From Ostrea edulis (taxonomy: Eukaryota): a DNA stretch of 64,000 nucleotides. Numbering within the stretch: the first letter of the stretch is position 1; each line of letters opens with the position of its first letter. Below, in pieces: positions 52,266 to 64,000 of the stretch. A model generated the notes under the pieces. That model searched no databases, was not told the origin of the DNA, and was given only the letters and a program-made list of their open reading frames with translations. The DNA lies in NCBI RefSeq assembly GCF_947568905.1, contig NC_079169.1:36456001-36520000 (forward strand), in the 5' to 3' direction. Made by a program: the position numbers and the translations under genes.

Positions 52266-54458
52266 GTACTACTTGGCTAACGACGATTATGTAACATAAA
52301 AGTTTTGTTTAAGAAGTACACAATTTAAAAGTGAAAAAGAAGTACCAGGAAATGTTCAGAACGCAGGATTTTGCGCCATCTACCCTACAGACCCCCGGGC
52401 TATTGATTTAAACCTTTAAATCAGCTTCTTTTTTTCATTGCGATAGTATGGAGATCTTTCAAAACAAGCAGTAAAAACCTAAGCGTTTTCATGTATAATG
52501 ACTGTTTTACGATCTCCCTTAGATGCTAAGGGTATTTAAACGGTGGTAGGGGTGGAGGTTGTGGAAAGTACGTAAAAGATCAAGTGCTAGACCTCTCCTT
52601 TGACAAATTCCTGGATCCGCCTATGAAATGTAATAAAATATATGGAACACATTTCCAGAGGGAGTCCCGGATGTGTACCAGATCACCATATTGATCGCGG
52701 GAAAAAATCAAAATTTTAAACCACTACATACTGAATGAAATATACATATTTCATTATTCAGTCCGCAAACGAAAATTATTTAGACGTCGGAAAGCCACTG
52801 ATCCATATTTCTTCTTTCAGAAACAGAGCAAGTTTAATCGTCTTTATTTCTCTTGGGAAGTAACTCGTTATGTGCGACTAGTTCGAAAAAGCATTACAAA
52901 GTTTAGTTGCAGAACTGTAGCTCTCTGAAAAAAATATTGGGACAAATCAGATCTGTCACAATATTTACAGTTCTACAGCTATACAAAGTTAAGGTAATAC
53001 ATAAAGATATACATCGCATTTCAAAGAATGACAAATATTTCACTCTAGTTTCATATATTTTTCCAACGATATGGACTTTCTCCTAGAATTAAGAGTGGGC
53101 CTCATCACTGTTGTAGAAATTGACAGGGCTTCCATGTTATGATTAAGCTTTTGATTAAAACCAGGGGTTGACAAAGCAATACGGTATTTCAGAATAGCTC
53201 CATTTGTAGCTTTATTCCTCTGGTCAGATTTAATAGTGTGACGTAGCAGTGGTGTGACGTAAGGAATTACTTCCCCCTCTGAACACTTCGTTTACTTATA
53301 TATAAGCTTATATAATACTAACGATATGAATTATATGATTAAAGCCAACACGTTACGACAGAACTAGAATATCAGATTCAATTTGTATCGTCACTAACAC
53401 GTAATAGTTGATTAGTGGTATTATAAAGGCCACTCTTTGATATTGGTTTTCTATTTCGAGTATAAATGTTGCAATCTTTCAACAATGGCACCTTGATGCG
53501 GAACGTCCCTTAATTCGCAACATACAGGGTCATTCAAAAGTACGATTTACCATTTACATGCAATGTTTTCAGTTTCTGTTATCAAAAGTGGCATCCTTCT
53601 AACGATTCTCCTTTACTTTTATTTCGTTATCAACTCTGTAGTAAGTATTTAGAGTTCATATAATATATTCTATTGACTTCAGAAGACCAAATTACTATGT
53701 GTGAGTTTTCATGTAGGCATCATTTATAAAGTTCGCCACATCATTTATTTTGCTAGGTTAAATATTGAAGATAATGGACCTGTGTTCTACTTATAACTAT
53801 ATAACAGCTGTTCCTAGCCTCATTCTGGGTCACAACGAGGGGTCACATTACACAAGGCCATCCATGAAAATCTGTATAACTCGACACCTGCGTAATCTGT
53901 ATCAATGTAAATTTTAACCCCAATGTTCACTTTCTTTATAGTACACTTGCGATTCGATACCGTGTCTAATTCGAACAAACTTTGTTTTCCGTTGTATGTC
54001 AAGTTAGACAGATTTCACTGTGTAGTGATCATAAACATTATAACTTACCATAACTAGACTACACTTATTGGAGAGTGTTATGAGGAATGTAATGAGTTAT
54101 CCAACAGGATGTATTTGCCGTTTCCATGACTAACAAGCGTTGGGAATCCCATCTCTTCCTTTCAAGAGACTGTGCATGTGTATTGCTGGTAGTGCCTCTG
54201 AATACACGTGTTTCCAAAGTTCCGATCCTAGAGGAACTTACTTGCTTGGTAACATCATGCAATCAACAAAGGACTTACACGGGAATTATGTCCATTTTGA
54301 CATGTTTACTTTTTGGTACTTTTCTATGCAGTGTTGATACTGGGATAAAAGAGTTAACTCAGAGATATGCTGTAATAAAGTTAACAGAACATAGGAAAAT
54401 CAACATGCCAGTAAACGTGTTATACAAGGTGCAAGGATGCCTGGACACAAAAAACTAC

Positions 54459-55052
54459 TGTAACGTGTAATGTGGGTTCAAACCACGGATAATAATTTTT
54501 CTTAAACGTTTCCTACGTTTCTAAATGATTGCATTAAACTCTATTTCTAAACAATGATAATAAATCAATTTGAATCAAACACTGGGATTATTTCCTTATT
54601 GATTTATTATATGATTTTCCTCTAACTATTCCTTGCCTAGTTTAATCACTCGTGTTTCAGCCTCTGGTCTGAAACCACTGTTTCAGACGCTGTTTCAAAT
54701 TACAAGTTCAAACCCTTTATTTATTTGAGCATTTGCTCCCGGGCTATCTTCTGAAGGAATAATGTCTCAAATGGTCCACCCACAGTAATTTGAGGTCCCG
54801 CATATGAGACAATAAACCTTACCTAAATTCTGGATGTGAGATACGATCTTCTCTCTTCTCCGTCTACCAGCAAACTAACTTAGATGCGCAGAAGCGCCTT
54901 CTATTTATACCTCCGCTCAATTCTACTGACTCATATACTAGTCTCCAAAACGTTTGAGACAATGTACAACACACAAGGAATAGCTAATCATTGACAAGAC
55001 TTTGATTGACCCTGATTGCCTCATTTACATAATAAAAGGAATTTTCATTACA
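54459..55052 (-). repeat. 3' LTR
   Basis: Manual alignment to 61140-61733 gives 14 substitutions and no indels (about 97.6% identity). Confidence 0.95.
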
Positions 55053-55206
55053 TTACCCACGCCTCCGAAATTTATGCGACCCTTCATAAGGAACAAAGAA
55101 ACAATTTTTTTAAAAAAATCATTATTATTATAGTTATCTTTAAGTAAACTACAACGTTTCAATCGTAAACGGTTTTCTGTCCGTGTCTTTTTTAAATCAT
55201 TGTCAT

Positions 55207-55912
55207 TTATTCCTGATATTCGAATTCTTCTTCTTCCATAATTTTCTCAACATGTTTGTTATCTTTGATGTAGGTCGACACGACTTTATGCAACTTTCGT
55301 ATCTTGAGGACTTTCTTTTGTCCCTCAGTAGACTGGTTCTCAGTCTGAGTACTAGAAGACTTGTATGTCTTCACAAAACTGAAATTCTGTATGGATGCTG
55401 TGCATGTCCTGCTGTTTTGGGTTGACACCACTGGTTCTCTTTGGTGCGAACATTGGAGCTGGTTCAGTGCGCTTTCGCACAACTATGCCCTTTTCCAAAG
55501 GACTACTGTTTCCCGGTATTGTTTGGCGTGTCTCTTTCTCATTATCAGTTTTATCTTCATTTGGTACGGATTGAGATTTCTGCATTTTGATTTCTTCTGG
55601 CCTTCCTTCACATGTCTCATCTTCTTCATCACTGGAACTTTCACTTGAACTGGATACCTGTACAATTAAATTCCCTAGATCCTGTCTAACCCACTCTTCG
55701 TCGCTCTCCACACCATTGTGATTCGTTGATTCTTTCTCATGGAACTTCTCGTGTCTGACCAGATATTCCTTCTTCTTGAATAATTTTCCACATGGAAACT
55801 TTCCACCCGTGCAACTCATTAAATGTTCAGGCCAATGATTATTCTGCACTTCTCCATCACACAATGGACATTGATTTCTTACTTTGGCTTTAGTTACTTT
55901 CAGGTTTGGCAT
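55207..55912 (-). pseudogene. Extra ORF (ORF3) of the Gypsy element: zinc-finger N-terminus, acidic linker, frameshifted C-terminus
   Basis: CPLC-x11-H-x3-C, then FPCGKLFKKKEYLVRHEKFH (C2H2-like, one Cys missing) and an SSSSESSSDEEDE tract. Continues in the overlapping 55207-55482 frame (KSSSTQTE...VEKIMEEEEF). Confidence 0.7.
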
Positions 55913-55978
55913 TTTCTACAAAATAAGATAAAACAATTTGCTGTAGTTAACATTTTTTTAAAAAAGTTTCATGCATCT

Positions 55979-57394
55979 CTAATAGGACTCATAGTCCTCT
56001 AACCACTTTGGTGGACCACATTTTCGTCTTGGTTTGGTAGACTTAACAAGTTCATCGACACTCTCAACAATTCTATCAGGTTCTTGCTCTATTTCATCTG
56101 CTTCAATGTCACTGTCTAACAACTCGGTTATCATACCGGAATCTTCACCTCGGAGGATTTGGTCCCTCTTTTTCGTATTCGATCGCAATGTATTATCTGC
56201 CTTTCACCTTTTCTTCCACAGTTAACAGCATAGAGCACTTCTGACCACTTTTCAAGGACTTCGAAAGGCCCACGCCAAAACGAAGTGAGCTTCGGAGAAC
56301 AACCTATTTTCTTTTGTGGAAAGTAAATAAAAACTTGATCACCTGGTTTAAATTTCTCCCAGGACATCTTCATATCATGATAGTTTTTCTGTCTACTCAT
56401 GGCAGCATCTGTGTAATTGCGAACAAAATTGTGGGCTCTCTCTATCCTTTCTTTAAGAATCCAAGCCCATTCATTTGGACTCCTACCTTTAAGAGGCTCT
56501 GGCATCTCATACTGCAAATCTAATGGCAAAGATGTTTCTCTTCCAAGCATTAACATGTTCGGCGTGAAACCTGTCGACTCATGCTCTGCAGACCTATATG
56601 ACATCATGATATAGGGATTGTGAGTGTCCCAATCTTTTTGATTCTCCTGTACATATGCGCTTAGCATACATGTTAAGGTTCGGTTAAATCTCTCTACCAT
56701 CCCATCAGACTGGGGATGGTAGGCCGTGGTCCCTGTTTTCTGAATGTTCAAAAGTTTACACACTTCACGGAAAAGCTCACATTCAAATTGTCTGCCTTGG
56801 TCAGAATGTATTATCTTAGGCGTTCCAAGTCTTACAATAAATTCTTCTACAATCAACTTAGCCACGGTTTTAGCCGCCATTTTTGGCATAGGAAAAACCT
56901 CCGTCCACTTAGTGAAGTAGTCTGAGACCACTAAAATATATCTATTGCCATTTTCCGGAATTGGTAGTTCGCCCAGAATATCAGCCGCTATGCGTTCCAA
57001 CGGCATCCCTGATGGAACAATCTGCATCGGCGCTATCGTTTTCTTATTCGGGTTCTTTCGCTTCGTACAAATGTCACAGCCTGTGACATATTGTCTTACA
57101 TCTTGATGTAAGACAGGCCAGTAGAACCTTTGTTTCACTCGGGCCAAAGTTTTATGTACTCCTAGATGTCCTGTCATCATGGCATTGTCTTAAGATTGTT
57201 CTTCTGTCAGAGAGAGGAATAACTTGCTGGAGTATTTCGTTATTGGTTTCCAACACTGTCCATCGTCTGCATACAATTCCGTTTGTCAATTTCAGTCTCT
57301 TCCATTGACTCCATAGTGATCTAAGAAAATATCCTGTACTTCTTATATCTTCAAACGATGGCCTCTCATTTGTTTCAAGCCAAGACTTGACCAA
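55979..57394 (-). pseudogene. Gypsy integrase (HHCC zinc-binding, DDE core, GPF motif), frameshifted
   Basis: CHD...GHLG...C..C; ERIAADILG, IHSDQGRQFE, DGMVERFNRT; WRGPFEV. Split over ORFs 57152-57394, 56131-57180 and 55979-56188. Confidence 0.92.
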
Positions 57395-57396
57395 AG

Positions 57397-58950
57397 CTAT
57401 GTCTTTATCTGACTTTCTTGCATCGACATGCTGTCTGTATCCTTTTCTTCAAAGACTGATCTAAGTTGCCCTTTGCTTATCAGGCTTTTGCCATTGCAGT
57501 TATCATAACCACATTGTCTACATGGGATGCGGCTCAAAGCGTCTGCATTGGTGTGCATTTTCCCTGGTCTATTATTGAATTTGGAATTCATATGTAGAAA
57601 GTGTTTCTATCTATCTTGCAAGCTGGCCTTCAGAATCTCTCTTTTTCAATAACCATCGTAGTGAACTGTGATCTGTTCTGATTAAGAATGGCTTCCCATA
57701 CAAATAATGTCTGAAATACTTCACAAAATGGACGATGGCCAGCAGTTCTTTACGTGTGACACAATACTTTCGTTCCGTTTTGCTTAAACAGCGACTTGCA
57801 TAGCAAGTTACTTTTTCTTCCCCGTCTTGTATTTGTGACAACACGGCGCCCATGGCCATATCACTGGCAATAGTGTCTAATATAAATGGTATTGTGAAAT
57901 CCGGGTGTGCCAGAATGGGTGCACTGATTAATCTATTTCGCAAAGTATCAAATGACTCCTGACAATTGCCAGACCAGATGGATTTCATTCCCTTTTGTGT
58001 TAACACATGTAATGGTTTCGCCAAAACTGCAAAGTTTGGTACGAATTTACGGTAATAGCTACAAAATCCAATGAAGGATCTTAGCTCTGTTACATTACAA
58101 GGTTGCGGCCATTTCTTGATAACTTCAGTCTTCTTTGGGTCTGTGGAAATGCCTTCTTCAGACACAACATGTCCCAAGTAGTCAACACTACGTGAAAATA
58201 GAGTGCACTTCTTCGCTTTCAATTTTAGTCCAGCTTTTGCAAGTTTGTCGAAGACCTTGGACAAATTAGTTTTCATTTCATTAAAGGTTCTGGCATATAC
58301 AATGATATCATATAAATAGATAAGACAAATGTCCCACTGCAAACCCTGTAGAGTTAACTCCATTAATCTTTCGAACGTAGCTGGGGCGTTACATAGCCCA
58401 AAGGGCATAACATTGAACTGATATAGCCCATTTCGAGTTACGAATGCTGTTTTGGCTTTGTCTTTTGAGTCCATTTCAATCTGCCAGTAACCAGAGTGTA
58501 AATCGAGGGTTGAAAACCATTTGCATCCAGCCAGTTGGTCCAGGGTCTCATCAATGCGTGGAATTGGATAGGCGTCTTTCTCAGTTATTGCATTCAATCG
58601 CCTATAGTCCACACAAAACCGTGTAGACCCATCCTTTTTTTCACCAATACTACTCTAGAAGATCAAGGGCTATTTGAAGGTTCTATAACCTTGTTCTTAA
58701 TCATTTCGTTCACGTGCTTTTCTACTTCTGCATTCCTGTGTTCTGGGAGTCGTCTTGGAACGTCCTTGATTGGTTTGTGATCCCCGGTGTCGATGCTATG
58801 TTTAGCAAGTCCTGTTCTTCCCATGTCACTATCAGACTTTGTAAAGAGTTAAGCATATTTCGACAGAAGAGTTTTAACTGCATTTGCTTCTGTCTTACTC
58901 ATCTTCAGGCAAGTCCTCATATACAGCTATTTTAAGTGCTCAGGCAATTT
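57397..58950 (-). pseudogene. Gypsy reverse transcriptase and RNase H, inactivated
   Basis: VDYRRLN...DAYPIPRID...[10 protein letters not shown]...[12 protein letters not shown]...YLYD (YxDD altered)...CYASRCL...TRKELLA...TDHSSL. In-frame stops occur in the upstream linker. Confidence 0.93.
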
Positions 58951-59056
58951 GTCATCATCAGTTGTAGGTTTGTAATCATCTTCTATTATACACTCTATGG
59001 GTGATAGTTGTCCAACTGTTGTTCCTGTGTGAATTATTACATTGTCGCCAGATGGA

Positions 59057-60943
59057 TTAAAAAGTCTTACCTCTCACTACTGTCCTTCCAACCAATCCTC
59101 TGTCAGAACTCAAAAACGTTTCTGCAGGCTCCACCACTCCAACATCTAAATTCATCTCATTGTTGTCTGGAACTACAACTTTTCCTGTTGTGACAATTTC
59201 CGTCTTTGATGGTATCGACACCGTTTCTAGTGCCACAATTCTAAAACACCCTATTCTTCCCTCAAATTCTAGAGAGTGAGTTTCATCTCCTAACTGCAGC
59301 GTTCTTTCATGTGAATTAATTATGCCTTTGTTAGCTTTTAAACAATCAAGGCCCAGAACAGCATCAACAGTCATGTCAGCAACCAGTATTGTCTGATACA
59401 ATATTTTCTTGCCAAACTTGCATTTCACGAGTGCCTTTCCGTATATTTGAAGAGGCGTTCCTGACGCTGATAATATACTCTGATTCGTTTCAGCCAATTC
59501 CAGTTTAGACTTTTTATTTATCTCTTCAAACTTCTTCCAAGATACCAGTGTAACTGTAGCCGCTGTATCAACCAATGCCAGGACAGGAATATCATTTATG
59601 TTACCTCTAATATACATTCCTGGCTCATTAGCATTTCTTTGAACTCCAATGCTTCCCTGATGCTCATGTCTAGGTTTTCTCCCACTATGGGTGGTCTTTT
59701 TGAAATGTCCAGAACTGTCGGGCTTGCCTTTGCCAATCTTGTCAATTTTGCTTGTGTTTGGTTGTGGAAACTTCTGATCAACTCTTCTGTTTGACTGAGC
59801 AAGTCTGCAGTCTCTCTTTAAATGACCAGGTTTGCCACAATTGTAACACTTCTTTGGAATCCCTACTTTAGAACCCTTCTCGAACACCCTTGGCACATTA
59901 TCGGTTTTAGAAGTTCTCTTTTCATATTTTATATCATTTACTTCTTTCTGCAACCTGACCAGTATCTCCTTGATAGAGCTAAGTGTTTCTTCTAAACTTT
60001 CACGCTTAGTTTCACGTTTATTATCATCTCCAACTTCTGGAAGAAAACCAGTTTCTTTATACTTTTTGCGTTCCGCTCCTACAAAAGCGTCAAGCTCAAC
60101 TGCATGCCGGATAGCATCGTTGAGGTCATGTGGTCTATACTCAGACGCATATCTGCGCTTGTGAGAGCATCAATAAAATACTCTTTAGCAAGAGTCTCAC
60201 AAACATCTGCTGGAGCAGTAGGATAGGCTAGGCGTGTTAATCGTCTGACATCTTGTCCAAGCTGTGGTATGGTTTCGCTAGCCCTTTTGTCTTCTCTCTC
60301 TTAGCTGAGCTCTATATAATTATGTTTGGTTAGCTGGAGAAAATCTCTCTTCTAGGGCTTTTGAGAGTTCCTTGAAATTCATTTGCAGTGTTTCAGTTAG
60401 GTTCCCAAGCACTCCCTGAGCCTGGCCCCTGAGGGAAACAGCAAGGTACATTCCCTTTTCAGCCTCAGACCAATGGTTCAAACAGGCACAAGCATTAAAA
60501 TGTGATTTATAATCTAACCACGATGTTGAACCATCATATGTTGCTAGTTTAAGCTTACCAGACTTATCTGTATTTTCTTGAGCACCTTCATTATTTAGTG
60601 CTTGTAACATGTCCTTTCTTCTACGTGTTGTAACATTTCTTGGCATATTGTCTGGCGTTTCTAGATACCTCGGTGTTGTTTCCGACCGAGACCTGTCTTT
60701 TCTTTTATAAAGTTCATACGAGTCTTCTGTCTGAGCATCAAGCTTAGTTTTAGGTCTTGCTCCTTTTGCCTCATAGTTTTCCTCTGCATTATGTTCTATT
60801 TTACGCCCAGACTCTCCAATGCCAGAGTCTCTTACAGTCCCAGGTGTTGACTGTGTCCTATGTTCCTTAATTCGAATGCTTTCATTAGAAAGTTCCTTAA
60901 TTTTCTCTTCTAGAAAACTTATTTCTTCGTCAATATTGTCCAT
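59057..60943 (-). pseudogene. Gypsy gag (CCHC knuckle) and aspartic protease, disrupted
   Basis: KLATYDGSTSWLDYKSHF...LAVSLRGQAQ; CYNCGKPGHLKRDC; LVDTAA (DTG altered). Nonsense codon at 60320 and frameshifts. Confidence 0.9.
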
Positions 60944-61115: not shown

Positions 61116-61133
61116 ATCCCACCGCTGCCACCA
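61116..61133 (-). promoter_or_regulatory. Primer-binding site complementary to the tRNA-Leu 3' end
   Basis: Minus strand TGGTGGCAGCGGTGGGAT is the reverse complement of ATCCCACCGCTGCCA-CCA, the 3' 18 nt of animal tRNA-Leu(AAG/TAG) as I recall it. It lies 6 nt inside the 5' LTR. Confidence 0.9.
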
Positions 61134-61139
61134 AAATTT

Positions 61140-61733
61140 TGTAACGTGTAATGTGGGTTCAAACCACGGATAATAATTTTTCTTAAACGTTTCCTACGTT
61201 TCTAAATGATTACATTAAACTATAGTTCTAAACAATGATAATAAATCAATTTGAATCAAACACTGGGATTATTTCCTTATTGATTTATTATATGATTTTC
61301 CTCTAACTATTCCTTGCCTATTTTAATCACTCGTGTTTCAGCCTCTGGTCTGAAACCACTGTTTCAGACGCTGTTTCAAACTACAAGTTTAAACCCTTTA
61401 TTTATTTGAGCATTTGCTCCCGGGCTATCTTCTGAAGGAATAATGTCTCAAATGGTCCACCCGCAGTAATTTGAGGTCCCGCATACGAGACAATAAACCT
61501 TACCTAAATTCTGGATGTGAGATATGATCTTTTCTCTTCTCCGTCTACCAGCAAACTAACTTAGATGCGCAGAAGCGCCTTCTATTTATACCTCCGCTCA
61601 ATTCTGCTGACTCATATACTAGTCTCCAAAACGTTTAAGACAATGTACAACACACAAGGAATAGCTAATCATTGACAATACTTTGATTGACCCTGATTGC
61701 CTCATTTACATAATCAAAGGAATTTTCATTACA
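61140..61733 (-). repeat. 5' LTR with TATA box (61590-61585), splice-donor consensus (61503) and AATAAA (~61406-61401)
   Basis: Minus strand GGTATAAATAG, AG|GTAAGG and AATAAATAAA occur in that 5'-to-3' order. Confidence 0.92.
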
Positions 61734-64000
61734 CTACAATATGAACCAATATGTGTCTTACTACAACCAAGATCATTATTATTTATACCAAATGACTGGA
61801 CATATCCATACCTACAATGGCTGTTCCTAGTCATACAATGGCTGTTCCTGGTCATACAATGGCTGTTCTTGGTCATATCAGGAATCTGCCAACTAGAACT
61901 AGTGGAGTTCCATCAAAGATTTTGCTACAAGAATTTTCAATCTGTTACAACTGAAGAAAGAGATGACATTTTCCCCCTCAGATGTTAAAGACGAGGTGAA
62001 GATAGATGACACCGATTTGGACTGCTCACACTCGCGGAGAGGATTGCAGCTGATTAGAGAGTACAATGACAGGTGCTGAGGACAATAAAGGGAGTACCCA
62101 ATAAATCCTTACAATCAAATGAAGAAACGAAGGATGATTTCACTGAGTATGAACAGTGAAGAGAAAAAGAAGCTGTTAACGAGTCATTACAATCTCTATA
62201 TCACTTTGGGCAACGTGATATTGGTTCGAAGGAAATGGTCAGCTACGCATGTGCATGGACGGTTAACCCAAAAGGCATCTCATAGCTTTTGATTTGCTGT
62301 TCAGATGTGTTGAACGATTCAGGTTCTAAGGAGCATCTTGTTATCTGGCTTGGTCAAAATATCATAACAGTTTTACACTTGTTTTCAATAAAAGCCACAA
62401 GAGACAAAATCATGTTATGTTTTAGCCATTGATTCCTTTCTACTCACACGTATACGCACGTCCAAAATAATTGCTTTTGAAAATCACCCAAGTGAAGCGG
62501 AATCAACCAAGTGTAGAGGATGTACATAGCTACTTGTCCGTACTTTTTAATTGCAGTAAAATTCGGGGATTTCAACACTGCATGGTGTGGTTTTAGTGTT
62601 CTTAGCTTGTAGACTTAAATCTGCCCCCAAACTCCCAATGGTGTCCGGTTTAATTCTGACGCATTTTAATCTAAATGTCAATCTAGAACTAAAATTCACT
62701 GCCGTCGTCAATTGCATGATGTCCAAAATGAACTCGTCTCTGTACTTTTGGCAAGTGCAAAACACTTATACACGTATTGTACATGTACTTAATAAAAAAG
62801 AATGTCGATTTCGCTGATCCGTAGTGGACCGACATTGTTAACTAAAATAAAAACACCAATTTCTAGTGGTCCCGCATCATCTATTTCTCAGCACACTCAG
62901 AGGTCCCCCTTCGGTGACAGTGATTAATTGTGGCACAAAACCTTTATACGAGTCCCGAAATTTATTACGCGGAACGCCTTTGGGAATAGTACTTTTTTAT
63001 TTCTTCTGATTTGGATCAAAATCAAACGTTCATTTTCGATATAGCTGTGGAATGTTTTATGTATTTTGTACTGAAGTTTTGCTTTGTTATGTAGCGAAAA
63101 CTACAATTTTTCATTATTTCCTGATGAAAGAGATTAAAGAATAACTTTATTTGATAACTGGCATGAAAACATTTACAATTATTTCAGATTCACCGGGACT
63201 TCACGCCATAGTTCTTTCAAGTCATTATGAAAAGAGGATTCATCATTTCTACCAGAAAATTGCTATCAAACTGTGAAATATCTTATCAATAGGAATAAAC
63301 TGTCAATATTTAGAAAAACACAAATTTGCAAAAATCCATTTTTGAGGACTGTCCTTACAATCAATATTATTTTGACAAGTTTTCGCACGAATTCCTCACG
63401 CTCTCGACTTGAATTTCATTACAAAATTGCTATTTGACAGCGGTGCAACACTTTACGGAGCAGACTGTGTGACAAATTGAATATCGGGAATGCTTGTCTT
63501 CCCTATCTGTTTAGTGTAGACTAATTGAGAATCAATACACAAGTAGAGTCATTACTGTATTAGACCTTTGATTATATCATCGTACTTATTAATTACTTAT
63601 ATACACACGGAAGTGTTTGATATCTAATAGCAACCTGAAAATATTAATTTTCTTCCATAGACACGATAAGAAATGCAAATAAATGAAAATGAACAAAATC
63701 CAATTTAAAAAATAAACTGAGGGAGAGAACACGCCCACAAGCAAAGATCAGCGGCTACGGAGGCCTAAAGAAGACTACAATGGTCGGCGGTTTTCGAGGC
63801 AGATTTGATTTCCAGGATTTCACACGGACAATCAATCAAATGGGGAATGACACCTGCCACTTGCTTGTGGCAAGTGAACTTCCTCTTTGTGACCAGATAG
63901 GTCAATTTAAATGGAATTTTTTTCTAAAGGAGAGAAGATGAAAAATATATAGATTGATTTTCATTATTGATTGCAATCTGGTTTGGGCATCGATTTGAAA

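What the first reader, a model, noticed from the sequence alone, without database searches (positions are those of the whole stretch)
55053..55070. Gypsy PPT position is a 15-nt sense copy of its own primer tRNA-Leu
Seen: 2 nt before the 3' LTR, where a polypurine tract belongs, the element's sense strand reads TTCGGAGGCGTGGGT-AA-|TGTAATG (plus 55069-55055). There is no clean purine run. Established, from my recall of the sequence: animal tRNA-Leu(AAG/TAG) ends ...CAGTCTC-TTCGGAGGCGTGGGT-TCGA-ATCCCACCGCTGCCA(CCA). The PBS at 61116-61133 binds the last 18 nt, and this 15-mer matches the segment ending 4 nt upstream of them. Inference: nascent minus-strand DNA crossing this site would be complementary to the tRNA attached to its own 5' end. 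The tRNA could then bridge or circularise the intermediate, or a tRNA fragment could prime the plus strand in place of an RNase H-resistant PPT. I know of no description of this arrangement.
Basis: partly seen in the sequence, partly recalled or inferred. Interest (0 to 1): 0.78.

Follow-up and report, generated by a model that had tools for sequence, protein, structure and literature searches.

The report
tRNA-Leu-like plus-strand primer tract
An oyster Gypsy retrotransposon clade carries, where the plus-strand primer tract belongs, an 11-15 base sense copy of host tRNA-Leu; the copy is real and conserved, but it stays unchanged in a sister family that switched to a tRNA-Lys primer, so it most likely works as an ordinary primer tract of tRNA origin.

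Summary
The 15-mer at 55055-55069 (minus strand), 2 nt before the 3' LTR, is identical to the variable-arm/T-stem segment of the oyster's own tRNA-Leu genes. That segment ends 4 nt before the 18 nt bound by the element's PBS.

- **Not chance:** the 15-mer occurs 32 times in the 895-Mb genome, all 30 inspected in tRNA-Leu(-derived) sequence or at this position in Gypsy elements (reversed-pattern control 0). None of 200,000 composition-preserving shuffles reached 15 nt.
- **Not private to this copy:** three sister families keep all 15 nt. More distant families, in this genome and in assemblies from two other ENA records, keep 11-14 nt.
- **Conserved module:** the tract always sits 19-20 nt downstream of a hairpin supported by compensatory changes.
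a recently mobile family nested in the clade uses a tRNA-Lys PBS yet keeps the tRNA-Leu-like tract (13 nt against 7 contiguous for tRNA-Lys). Several multi-copy families, some with near-identical LTRs, keep only 11 nt.

Best reading: a conventional G-rich plus-strand primer module. Its sequence was probably captured from packaged primer tRNA-Leu by template switching and then kept for primer function. Priming by a free tRNA-Leu fragment is not excluded. I found no published description of this tract.

The parts
61140..61733 (-). 5' LTR (TGTAATG...CGTTACA), 97% identical to the 3' LTR
   Evidence: The GTAG target-site duplication lies at 61734-61737 and 54455-54458.
61153..61163 (-). U5 box TTTGAACCCAC, complementary to the tRNA-Leu T arm (GTGGGTTC) and resembling a primer activation signal
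   Evidence: The 8-nt match was reached by 517 of 20,000 shuffles. Similar boxes occur in families C, D and E.
61116..61133 (-). Primer binding site: 18 nt perfectly complementary to tRNA-Leu positions 59-76 (with CCA)
55352..60943 (-). Broken gag-pol region: CCHC zinc knuckle, protease, RT, RNase H and integrase, plus a downstream 186-aa ORF. It is split into at least 5 ORF pieces.
   Evidence: Pfam RVT_1, RT_RNaseH_2, rve, Integrase_H2C2, zf-CCHC.
55072..55089 (-). Decayed copy of the conserved hairpin upstream of the primer tract. Intact family copies read ATATGC-AGGGTC-GCATAT.
   Evidence: covariation across 11 families. This copy no longer folds into the hairpin.
55053..55071 (-). Putative plus-strand primer tract of 19 nt. 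The 15-mer identical to tRNA-Leu lies at 55055-55069, and the AA at 55053-55054 is probably trimmed at integration.
54459..55052 (-). 3' LTR

Best explanation
The tract is the element's plus-strand primer (PPT) module. It consists of a small conserved hairpin, a fixed 19-20 nt interval, and then the LTR. The last 13 nt of that interval are an invariant G-rich core, GAGGCGTGGGTA(A/G).

The tRNA-Leu identity is most simply a relic. During minus-strand synthesis in an ancestor of the clade, RT switched templates onto the abundantly packaged primer tRNA-Leu and copied about 15 nt ending at T54. The G-rich insert then served as the RNase H-resistant primer. Since then the part nearest the priming end has been held by primer function, and the 5' part (TTCG) has decayed in some lineages.

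Shown:
- the identity to tRNA-Leu;
- its conservation across families;
- the hairpin covariation and the constant spacing;
- independence from PBS identity.

Inferred:
- the capture event;
- RNase H resistance of the tract;
- the idea that the hairpin pauses RT so that RNase H sits at the tract/U3 junction.
For: - **Identity to the host tRNA-Leu:** exact, and far beyond composition-matched chance.
- **A graded match across families:**
  - 15 nt in families A, B and C (RT 79-100% identical to the window's);
  - 14 nt in G and L051;
  - 13 nt in L052, L053, L057, L059 and L060;
  - 11 nt in D, E, F, H, I and L058. D and L058 look like the longer match with one G deleted.
  - The match always ends at the T54 equivalent, 2-3 nt before the TG of the LTR.
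  - This pattern fits one long ancestral copy that eroded from its 5' side.
- **Flanking sequence:** the non-coding sequence around the module cannot be aligned between families, whereas the module can.
- **Hairpin:** 93.5% of cells are paired, 4 of 7 pairs show changes on both sides, and 0 of 500 shuffles reached this.
- **Spacing:** the hairpin-to-LTR distance is 19-20 nt in all 11 families.
- **PBS switch:** the tRNA-Lys PBS family keeps the tract and was recently mobile. Its LTRs are 99.9-100% identical and it has target-site duplications. It is nested in the Leu-type clade with 94/95 support. The oyster tRNA-Lys shares only 7 contiguous nt with the tract.
- **tRNA copying happens in this genome:** L019 carries a PBS followed by antisense tRNA-Leu down to about position 40, which shows that RT here does copy tRNA-Leu.
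Against: - **No intermediate:** no direct trace of the capture event exists. Two template switches are required.
- **TCG kept in many lineages:** this could reflect selection for tRNA identity rather than for primer function.
- **Hairpin stability:** it is thermodynamically unremarkable (z about 0).
- **Hairpin role:** the proposed ruler function is inference only.
- **Priming site:** plus-strand initiation has not been mapped. The primer's 3' end, and even the use of this tract as primer, are assumed from position.
- **Host of the tRNA-Lys family:** the species behind the ENA assembly is unknown, and its tRNA-Leu could not be read.
Confidence: 0.55

Rival explanations
1. A free tRNA-Leu fragment ending at U54 anneals to the minus-strand DNA and primes the plus strand, in place of or alongside an RNase H-resistant genomic RNA. 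Such a fragment could be the 5' partner of the 22-nt 3' tRF cut, or an internal tRF.
For: - The match ends at the T54 equivalent in every family. It leaves 2 nt (AA or AG) before TG, which is the usual overhang removed by integrase (the 2-nt rule is from my own knowledge of retroviruses).
- The model explains the identity by function, and it survives the switch to a tRNA-Lys PBS because tRNA-Leu is always present.
- A mouse internal tRF with the sequence CTTCGGAGGCGTGGGT is used as a qPCR target in PMC12830950. Stable fragments of exactly this segment therefore exist in animals.
Against: - I know of no retroelement that uses a host RNA as its plus-strand primer.
- The tract is a plausible PPT on its own.
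- The conserved hairpin and fixed spacing point to processing of the element's own RNA.
- There are no oyster small-RNA data. Only assembled contigs were on offer.
Confidence: 0.12
2. The tRNA covalently attached to the 5' end of the minus strand pairs with the newly made complement of the tract, bridging or circularising the intermediate.
For: - In families A-C the minus strand would be 15/15 complementary to the attached tRNA.
- tRNA bridging of genome ends has a precedent in Ty3 and Drosophila Gypsy (PMC5371799, PMC1635307).
Against: - The tRNA-Lys-primed family keeps the Leu-type tract and has not moved towards tRNA-Lys, although only two changes would be needed.
- Multi-copy families D-F have only 11 nt.
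- The site would already be occupied by the identical genomic RNA.
- The known bridges use sequences complementary to the tRNA in the RNA genome, whereas this one is sense.
Confidence: 0.05
3. The match is coincidence or convergence. A G-rich PPT happens to resemble the G-rich variable-arm/T-stem segment that many tRNAs share.
For: - tRNA-Lys also matches the tract at 11 of 13 positions, so this tRNA region is generically PPT-like.
- A fish relative has a similar G-rich tract, AGAGTGGGGGTAG, and no tRNA copy.
- The scan examined very many elements, so a look-elsewhere effect applies.
Against: - Composition-preserving shuffles gave 11 nt or more in 9-48 of 200,000 trials, and never 14 or more.
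- The best match is to the clade's own ancestral primer tRNA.
- The 13-15 nt state is spread across most lineages.
Confidence: 0.13
4. The tract is a protein-binding mimic. It copies the tRNA-Leu surface recognised by the element's RT, integrase or Gag, and so recruits that protein to the 3' end of the genome for packaging or precise RNase H cutting.
For: - The tract is strongly conserved next to a conserved hairpin.
- U5 boxes complementary to the T or D arm of tRNA-Leu show that this clade makes extended tRNA contacts.
Against: - No protein evidence exists.
- The tract survives a change of primer tRNA.
- In the tRNA this segment is partly base-paired, so a linear copy is a poor structural mimic.
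Confidence: 0.07

Closest known systems
Canonical polypurine tract of retroviruses and LTR retrotransposons (HIV-1, Ty3, Ty1)
   Same: It lies immediately upstream of U3 and is G-rich at its 3' end. Two nucleotides separate it from the TG of the LTR, and it is highly conserved within a lineage (Ty3 PPT described in PMC5371799).
   Different: It is interrupted by C and T, and 11-15 nt are identical to a host tRNA. It is preceded at a fixed 19-20 nt by a covarying hairpin. I found no description of any of these three features.
Bipartite or second primer binding sites bridging genome ends (Ty3 with tRNAiMet; Drosophila Gypsy 3' site with tRNA-Lys,2)
   Same: A tRNA-related sequence sits near the 3' end of a Gypsy-type genome and involves the variable/T-arm region of the primer tRNA (PMC5371799, PMC1635307).
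   Different: Those sites are complementary to the tRNA and bind it in the RNA genome. This tract has the same sense as the tRNA, so it cannot bind the tRNA as RNA. It also does not follow the PBS identity.
Primer activation signal and U5-T-arm contacts of retroviruses (HIV-1, avian retroviruses; from my own knowledge)
   Same: The U5 boxes found here (TTTGAACCCAC and relatives) are complementary to the tRNA-Leu T arm, upstream of the PBS.
   Different: This concerns the 5' end of the genome, not the finding itself. Support here is modest (p about 0.003-0.13 per family).
tRNA-derived sequences inside LTR elements (Helenus/TRIMp3, Kojima 2024, PMC10886601)
   Same: An LTR retroelement in bivalves carries tRNA-derived sequence.
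   Different: Helenus carries a whole tRNA-like Pol III unit inside its LTRs. Here only a 15-nt piece sits outside the LTR, at the primer position of an autonomous element, and no cloverleaf is present.

Membership tests
Ty3/Gypsy LTR retrotransposon | Paired LTRs with TG..CA ends and a 4-bp target-site duplication | tested here: met
   LTRs of about 594 bp, 97% identical, reading TGTAATG...GTTACA, with a GTAG duplication.
Ty3/Gypsy LTR retrotransposon | Domain order gag(CCHC)-PR-RT-RNase H-IN | tested here: met
   Pfam hits in that order. The reading frame in this copy is broken into pieces.
Ty3/Gypsy LTR retrotransposon | tRNA primer binding site just downstream of the 5' LTR | tested here: met
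   18/18 complementarity to host tRNA-Leu plus CCA.
Canonical PPT | Purine-rich tract abutting U3 | tested here: inconclusive
   The tract is 11 of 14 purines and contains C and T. Its position and conservation fit a PPT.
Canonical PPT | RNase H-resistant RNA that primes plus-strand DNA | not testable with these tools
   This needs cDNA end mapping or cleavage assays. Only assembled contigs of public runs were available.
Bipartite PBS / 3' tRNA binding site (Ty3, Drosophila Gypsy) | A 3' sequence complementary to the primer tRNA | tested here: not met
   The tract has the same sense as the tRNA genes. No 5'-3' duplex beat shuffled controls.
   The tRNA-Lys PBS family keeps the tRNA-Leu-like tract. 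In the fish relative with a tRNA-Pro PBS I saw no tRNA-like tract, but I compared it with tRNA-Pro only from memory.
Helenus/TRIMp3 | tRNA-like Pol III unit within the LTR | tested here: not met
   ARAGORN finds no tRNA in the window. The tRNA piece is 15 nt long and lies outside the LTR.

The most novel reading that the evidence does not exclude
This bivalve Gypsy clade starts its plus strand from a host tRNA-Leu fragment ending at U54, which anneals to the minus-strand DNA. Both DNA strands would then be primed by tRNA-derived RNA, and the tract would be a second primer binding site rather than a PPT.
Probability: 0.1. Interest if true: 0.85.

Novelty: new variant of a known kind. Interest (0 to 1): 0.5.

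Why it matters
The plus-strand primer is the least varied part of LTR-element replication, and it is assumed to be a purine run defined only by RNase H resistance. This clade differs in three ways:
- its primer tract is a recognisable piece of the primer tRNA;
- the tract is coupled to a covarying hairpin at a fixed distance;
- the tract persists after a change of PBS.

If the tRNA origin is right, it is a clean example of a retroelement turning captured packaged host RNA into an essential cis element. If a tRNA fragment is the actual primer, it would be a new priming mechanism.

In practice, purine-run-based PPT finders will miss this module in bivalve genomes.

Tried and rejected
**Searches for alternative tRNAs or interactions**
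- I looked for tRNA genes matching the variant PBS middles of families D, E and F. None exist, so these are tRNA-Leu PBSs with inherited internal mismatches, not other tRNAs.
- I looked for 5'-3' RNA pairing between the U5/PBS region and the tract region in 11 families. The energies were no better than shuffles, so cyclisation through the tract is rejected.
- I looked for tRNA-Lys-primed members in the window's own genome. There are 11 tRNA-Lys PBS sites, none near a tract of this type.

**Structure**
- The hairpin's stability is not exceptional, so only covariation supports it.
- There are no tRNA genes in the window or in the foreign loci.

**Limits of the tools**
More distant families at 57-62% RT identity could not be read in this genome.
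- Read-level mapping of plus-strand ends was not possible. Only contigs were available, so I did not use read laying.
- Look-up of one protein (P0003) found no record.
- The pseudoscorpion relative (L056) has no such tract.

**Literature**
- Three searches found no description of the tract.

Full report
**What is there.** The window holds one Ty3/Gypsy element on the minus strand, 7,275 bp long.
- The LTRs lie at 61733..61140 and 55052..54459. They are 97% identical, read TGTAATG...CGTTACA, and are flanked by a GTAG target-site duplication.
- Pfam finds a CCHC knuckle, protease, RT, RNase H and integrase in Gypsy order. The frame is broken into pieces, so this copy is dead.
- The PBS (61133..61116) is 18/18 complementary to the 3' end, with CCA, of the host tRNA-Leu.
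- The 15-mer TTCGGAGGCGTGGGT sits at 55069..55055, followed by AA and then the LTR.

**Is the observation true and non-random?** Yes.
- The 15-mer occurs 32 times in the 895-Mb genome; the reversed control gives 0 and about 1.7 are expected.
- Of the 30 sites inspected, 16 are tRNA-Leu genes or pseudogenes (anticodons AAG, TAG, CAA, TAA). These read ...TCTC-[15-mer]-TCGA-ATCCCACCGCTGCCA.
- Thirteen more are the same pre-LTR position in Gypsy copies, and one (L019) is a tRNA read-through fossil.
- The tract therefore equals the tRNA from the variable-arm loop to T54.
- Composition-preserving shuffles of the 19-nt tract share 11 nt or more with the tRNA in 45 of 200,000 trials, and never 15.

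**How far does it extend?** An RT search of the genome found over 3,000 candidates.

| Family or locus | RT identity to the window | PBS | Match to tRNA-Leu |
|---|---|---|---|
| A, B, C | 79-100% | perfect Leu | 15 nt |
| G (own genome) | 66-67% | Leu, perfect or with GTC middle | 14 nt |
| D, E, F | 66-68% | Leu-type with 2-5 nt internal mismatch | 11 nt (core GAGGCGTGGGT) |
| H, I (own genome) | not determined | Leu (perfect) for H; not determined for I | 11 nt |
| L051 (ENA) | 67% | Leu-like with one extra G | 14 nt |
| L057 (ENA) | 65% | Leu-type variant | 13 nt |
| L060 (ENA) | 65% | perfect Leu | 13 nt |
| L058 (ENA) | 65% | perfect Leu | 11 nt |
| L052, L053, L059 (ENA) | 66% | tRNA-Lys | 13 nt |

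- PBS assignments for G and H come from pairing two censuses by coordinate.
- No tRNA gene matches the internal mismatches in the D, E and F PBSs.
- A census of the core next to TAATGT found 60 sites (control 0) with several spacer types.
- D and L058 look like the longer match with one G deleted.
- Related elements from other assemblies (ENA records, species not named) were reached through a protein word search and contig look-ups.
- In every family the match ends at the T54 equivalent, 2-3 nt before the TG of the LTR.

**A conserved module.**
- Between families the surrounding non-coding DNA cannot be aligned. A hairpin, the tract and the LTR start do align.
- The hairpin is typically CATGCG-NGGA-CGCATG. 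It is paired in 93.5% of cells, and 4 of 7 pairs show changes on both sides. Examples are GCG/CGC to GTG/CAC and to CCG/CGG. No shuffle out of 500 reached these values.
- Its predicted stability is ordinary, so the support is evolutionary rather than energetic.
- The distance from the hairpin's 3' base to the LTR is 19-20 nt in all 11 families.
- That distance is close to the spacing between the polymerase and RNase H sites of retroviral RTs (from my own knowledge). A paused RT would thus place RNase H at the tract/U3 junction. This is an inference.

**The decisive test.**
- L052, L053 and L059 form one family in one foreign assembly. They have the PBS TGGCGCCCAACGTGGGGC, which is complementary to tRNA-Lys; the oyster's own tRNA-Lys genes end ...CCCCACGTTGGGCG.
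- Their LTRs are 99.9-100% identical and they have clean 4-bp duplications, so they moved recently.
- Their pre-LTR tract is still CGGAGGCGTGGGT. That is 13 contiguous nt of tRNA-Leu, against 7 contiguous (11 of 13 overall) for tRNA-Lys.
- In the RT tree this family is sister to two Leu-type families (support 94/95), inside an otherwise Leu-type clade. The PBS therefore switched and the tract did not follow.
- Together with the multi-copy 11-nt families, this removes the need for pairing between the tract's complement and the attached primer tRNA.
- A fish relative with a tRNA-Pro PBS showed no tRNA-like tract by eye (I compared it with tRNA-Pro only from memory), and a pseudoscorpion relative lacks the tract.

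**What it most likely is.**
- It is a conventional plus-strand primer module whose sequence came from tRNA-Leu.
- A sense copy cannot arise by read-through of the primer, because read-through gives antisense copies next to the PBS. L019 in this genome is an example.
- A sense copy can arise if RT copying the RNA genome switches to a packaged tRNA and back. The match erodes from the 5' side while the 3' core is invariant, which fits one long ancestral insert kept for primer function.
- I put this at 0.55.

**What remains open.**
- A free tRNA-Leu fragment ending at U54 could prime the plus strand. This model explains the identity by function and survives the PBS switch.
- A mouse internal tRF covering exactly this segment is on record (PMC12830950). 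There are no oyster data and no precedent, so I put this at about 0.1.

**Comparison with known systems.**
- Ty3 and Drosophila Gypsy have 3' sites that bind the primer tRNA, but those sites are complementary to it (PMC5371799, PMC1635307). This tract is sense.
- Helenus elements carry whole tRNA-like units inside their LTRs (PMC10886601). This element does not.
- Searches for the tract sequence, and for PPT-tRNA identity, found no prior description.

**Limits.**
- Plus-strand initiation was not mapped, because only assembled contigs of public runs were on offer.
- The species of the foreign assemblies is unknown.
- More distant families in this genome could not be read.

Noticed in passing
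window 61153-61163 (-); also L038, L044, L048, L057, L058 just upstream of their PBS: U5 boxes 24-41 nt upstream of the PBS are complementary to the tRNA-Leu T arm (families A, C, D, E; 7-8 nt exact, 8-10 bp with wobble) or D arm (L057 10 nt, L058 8 nt). They resemble the primer activation signal and U5-T-arm contacts of retroviruses. Each is only modestly significant (55 to 2,530 of 20,000 shuffles).
   Followed up: partly
G000, 266 sites; e.g. L044, L048, L049: The PBS keeps TGGTGGCAGC and GGGAT constant, but the 3-5 nt between them differ by family (GGT, GTC, AAC, AGC, TGC, TGT, TCAGA and others). No tRNA gene matches the variants. These stably inherited mismatches suggest that the inner PBS is copied from the element and not from the tRNA, as reported for Ty3 and Ty1.
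   Followed up: partly
L019:1490-1540 (G000:C3:78706364 region): A tRNA-Leu PBS is followed by an antisense copy of tRNA-Leu down to about position 40. This is a fossil of RT reading through the primer tRNA, and it resembles the earlier finding s1-287395.
   Followed up: partly
L052:11948-11966, L057, L060: In the sub-clade that includes the tRNA-Lys-primed family, the spacer ACCC pairs with the GGGT of the tract and forms a second predicted hairpin over the primer tract itself. For L052 the energy is -13.6 kcal/mol and z is -2.7.
   Followed up: no
window 55352-55912 (-); L051:9242-9961: An extra ORF lies downstream of integrase (186 aa here, with no Pfam hit). The related locus L051 has a 239-aa product with faint C2H2 zinc-finger hits at the same position.
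   Followed up: no
L054 and L055 (Kryptolebias, GCA_001649575.2): The fish relative is present as a tandem of two internal regions sharing three 247-bp LTRs, annotated as a single 2,862-aa protein. The same tandem occurs on two chromosomes.
   Followed up: no
window 55072-55089 (-): This dead copy has three substitutions in the hairpin relative to sister copies. Two of them turn an A-T pair into T-A, and the third breaks a C-G pair.
   Followed up: no
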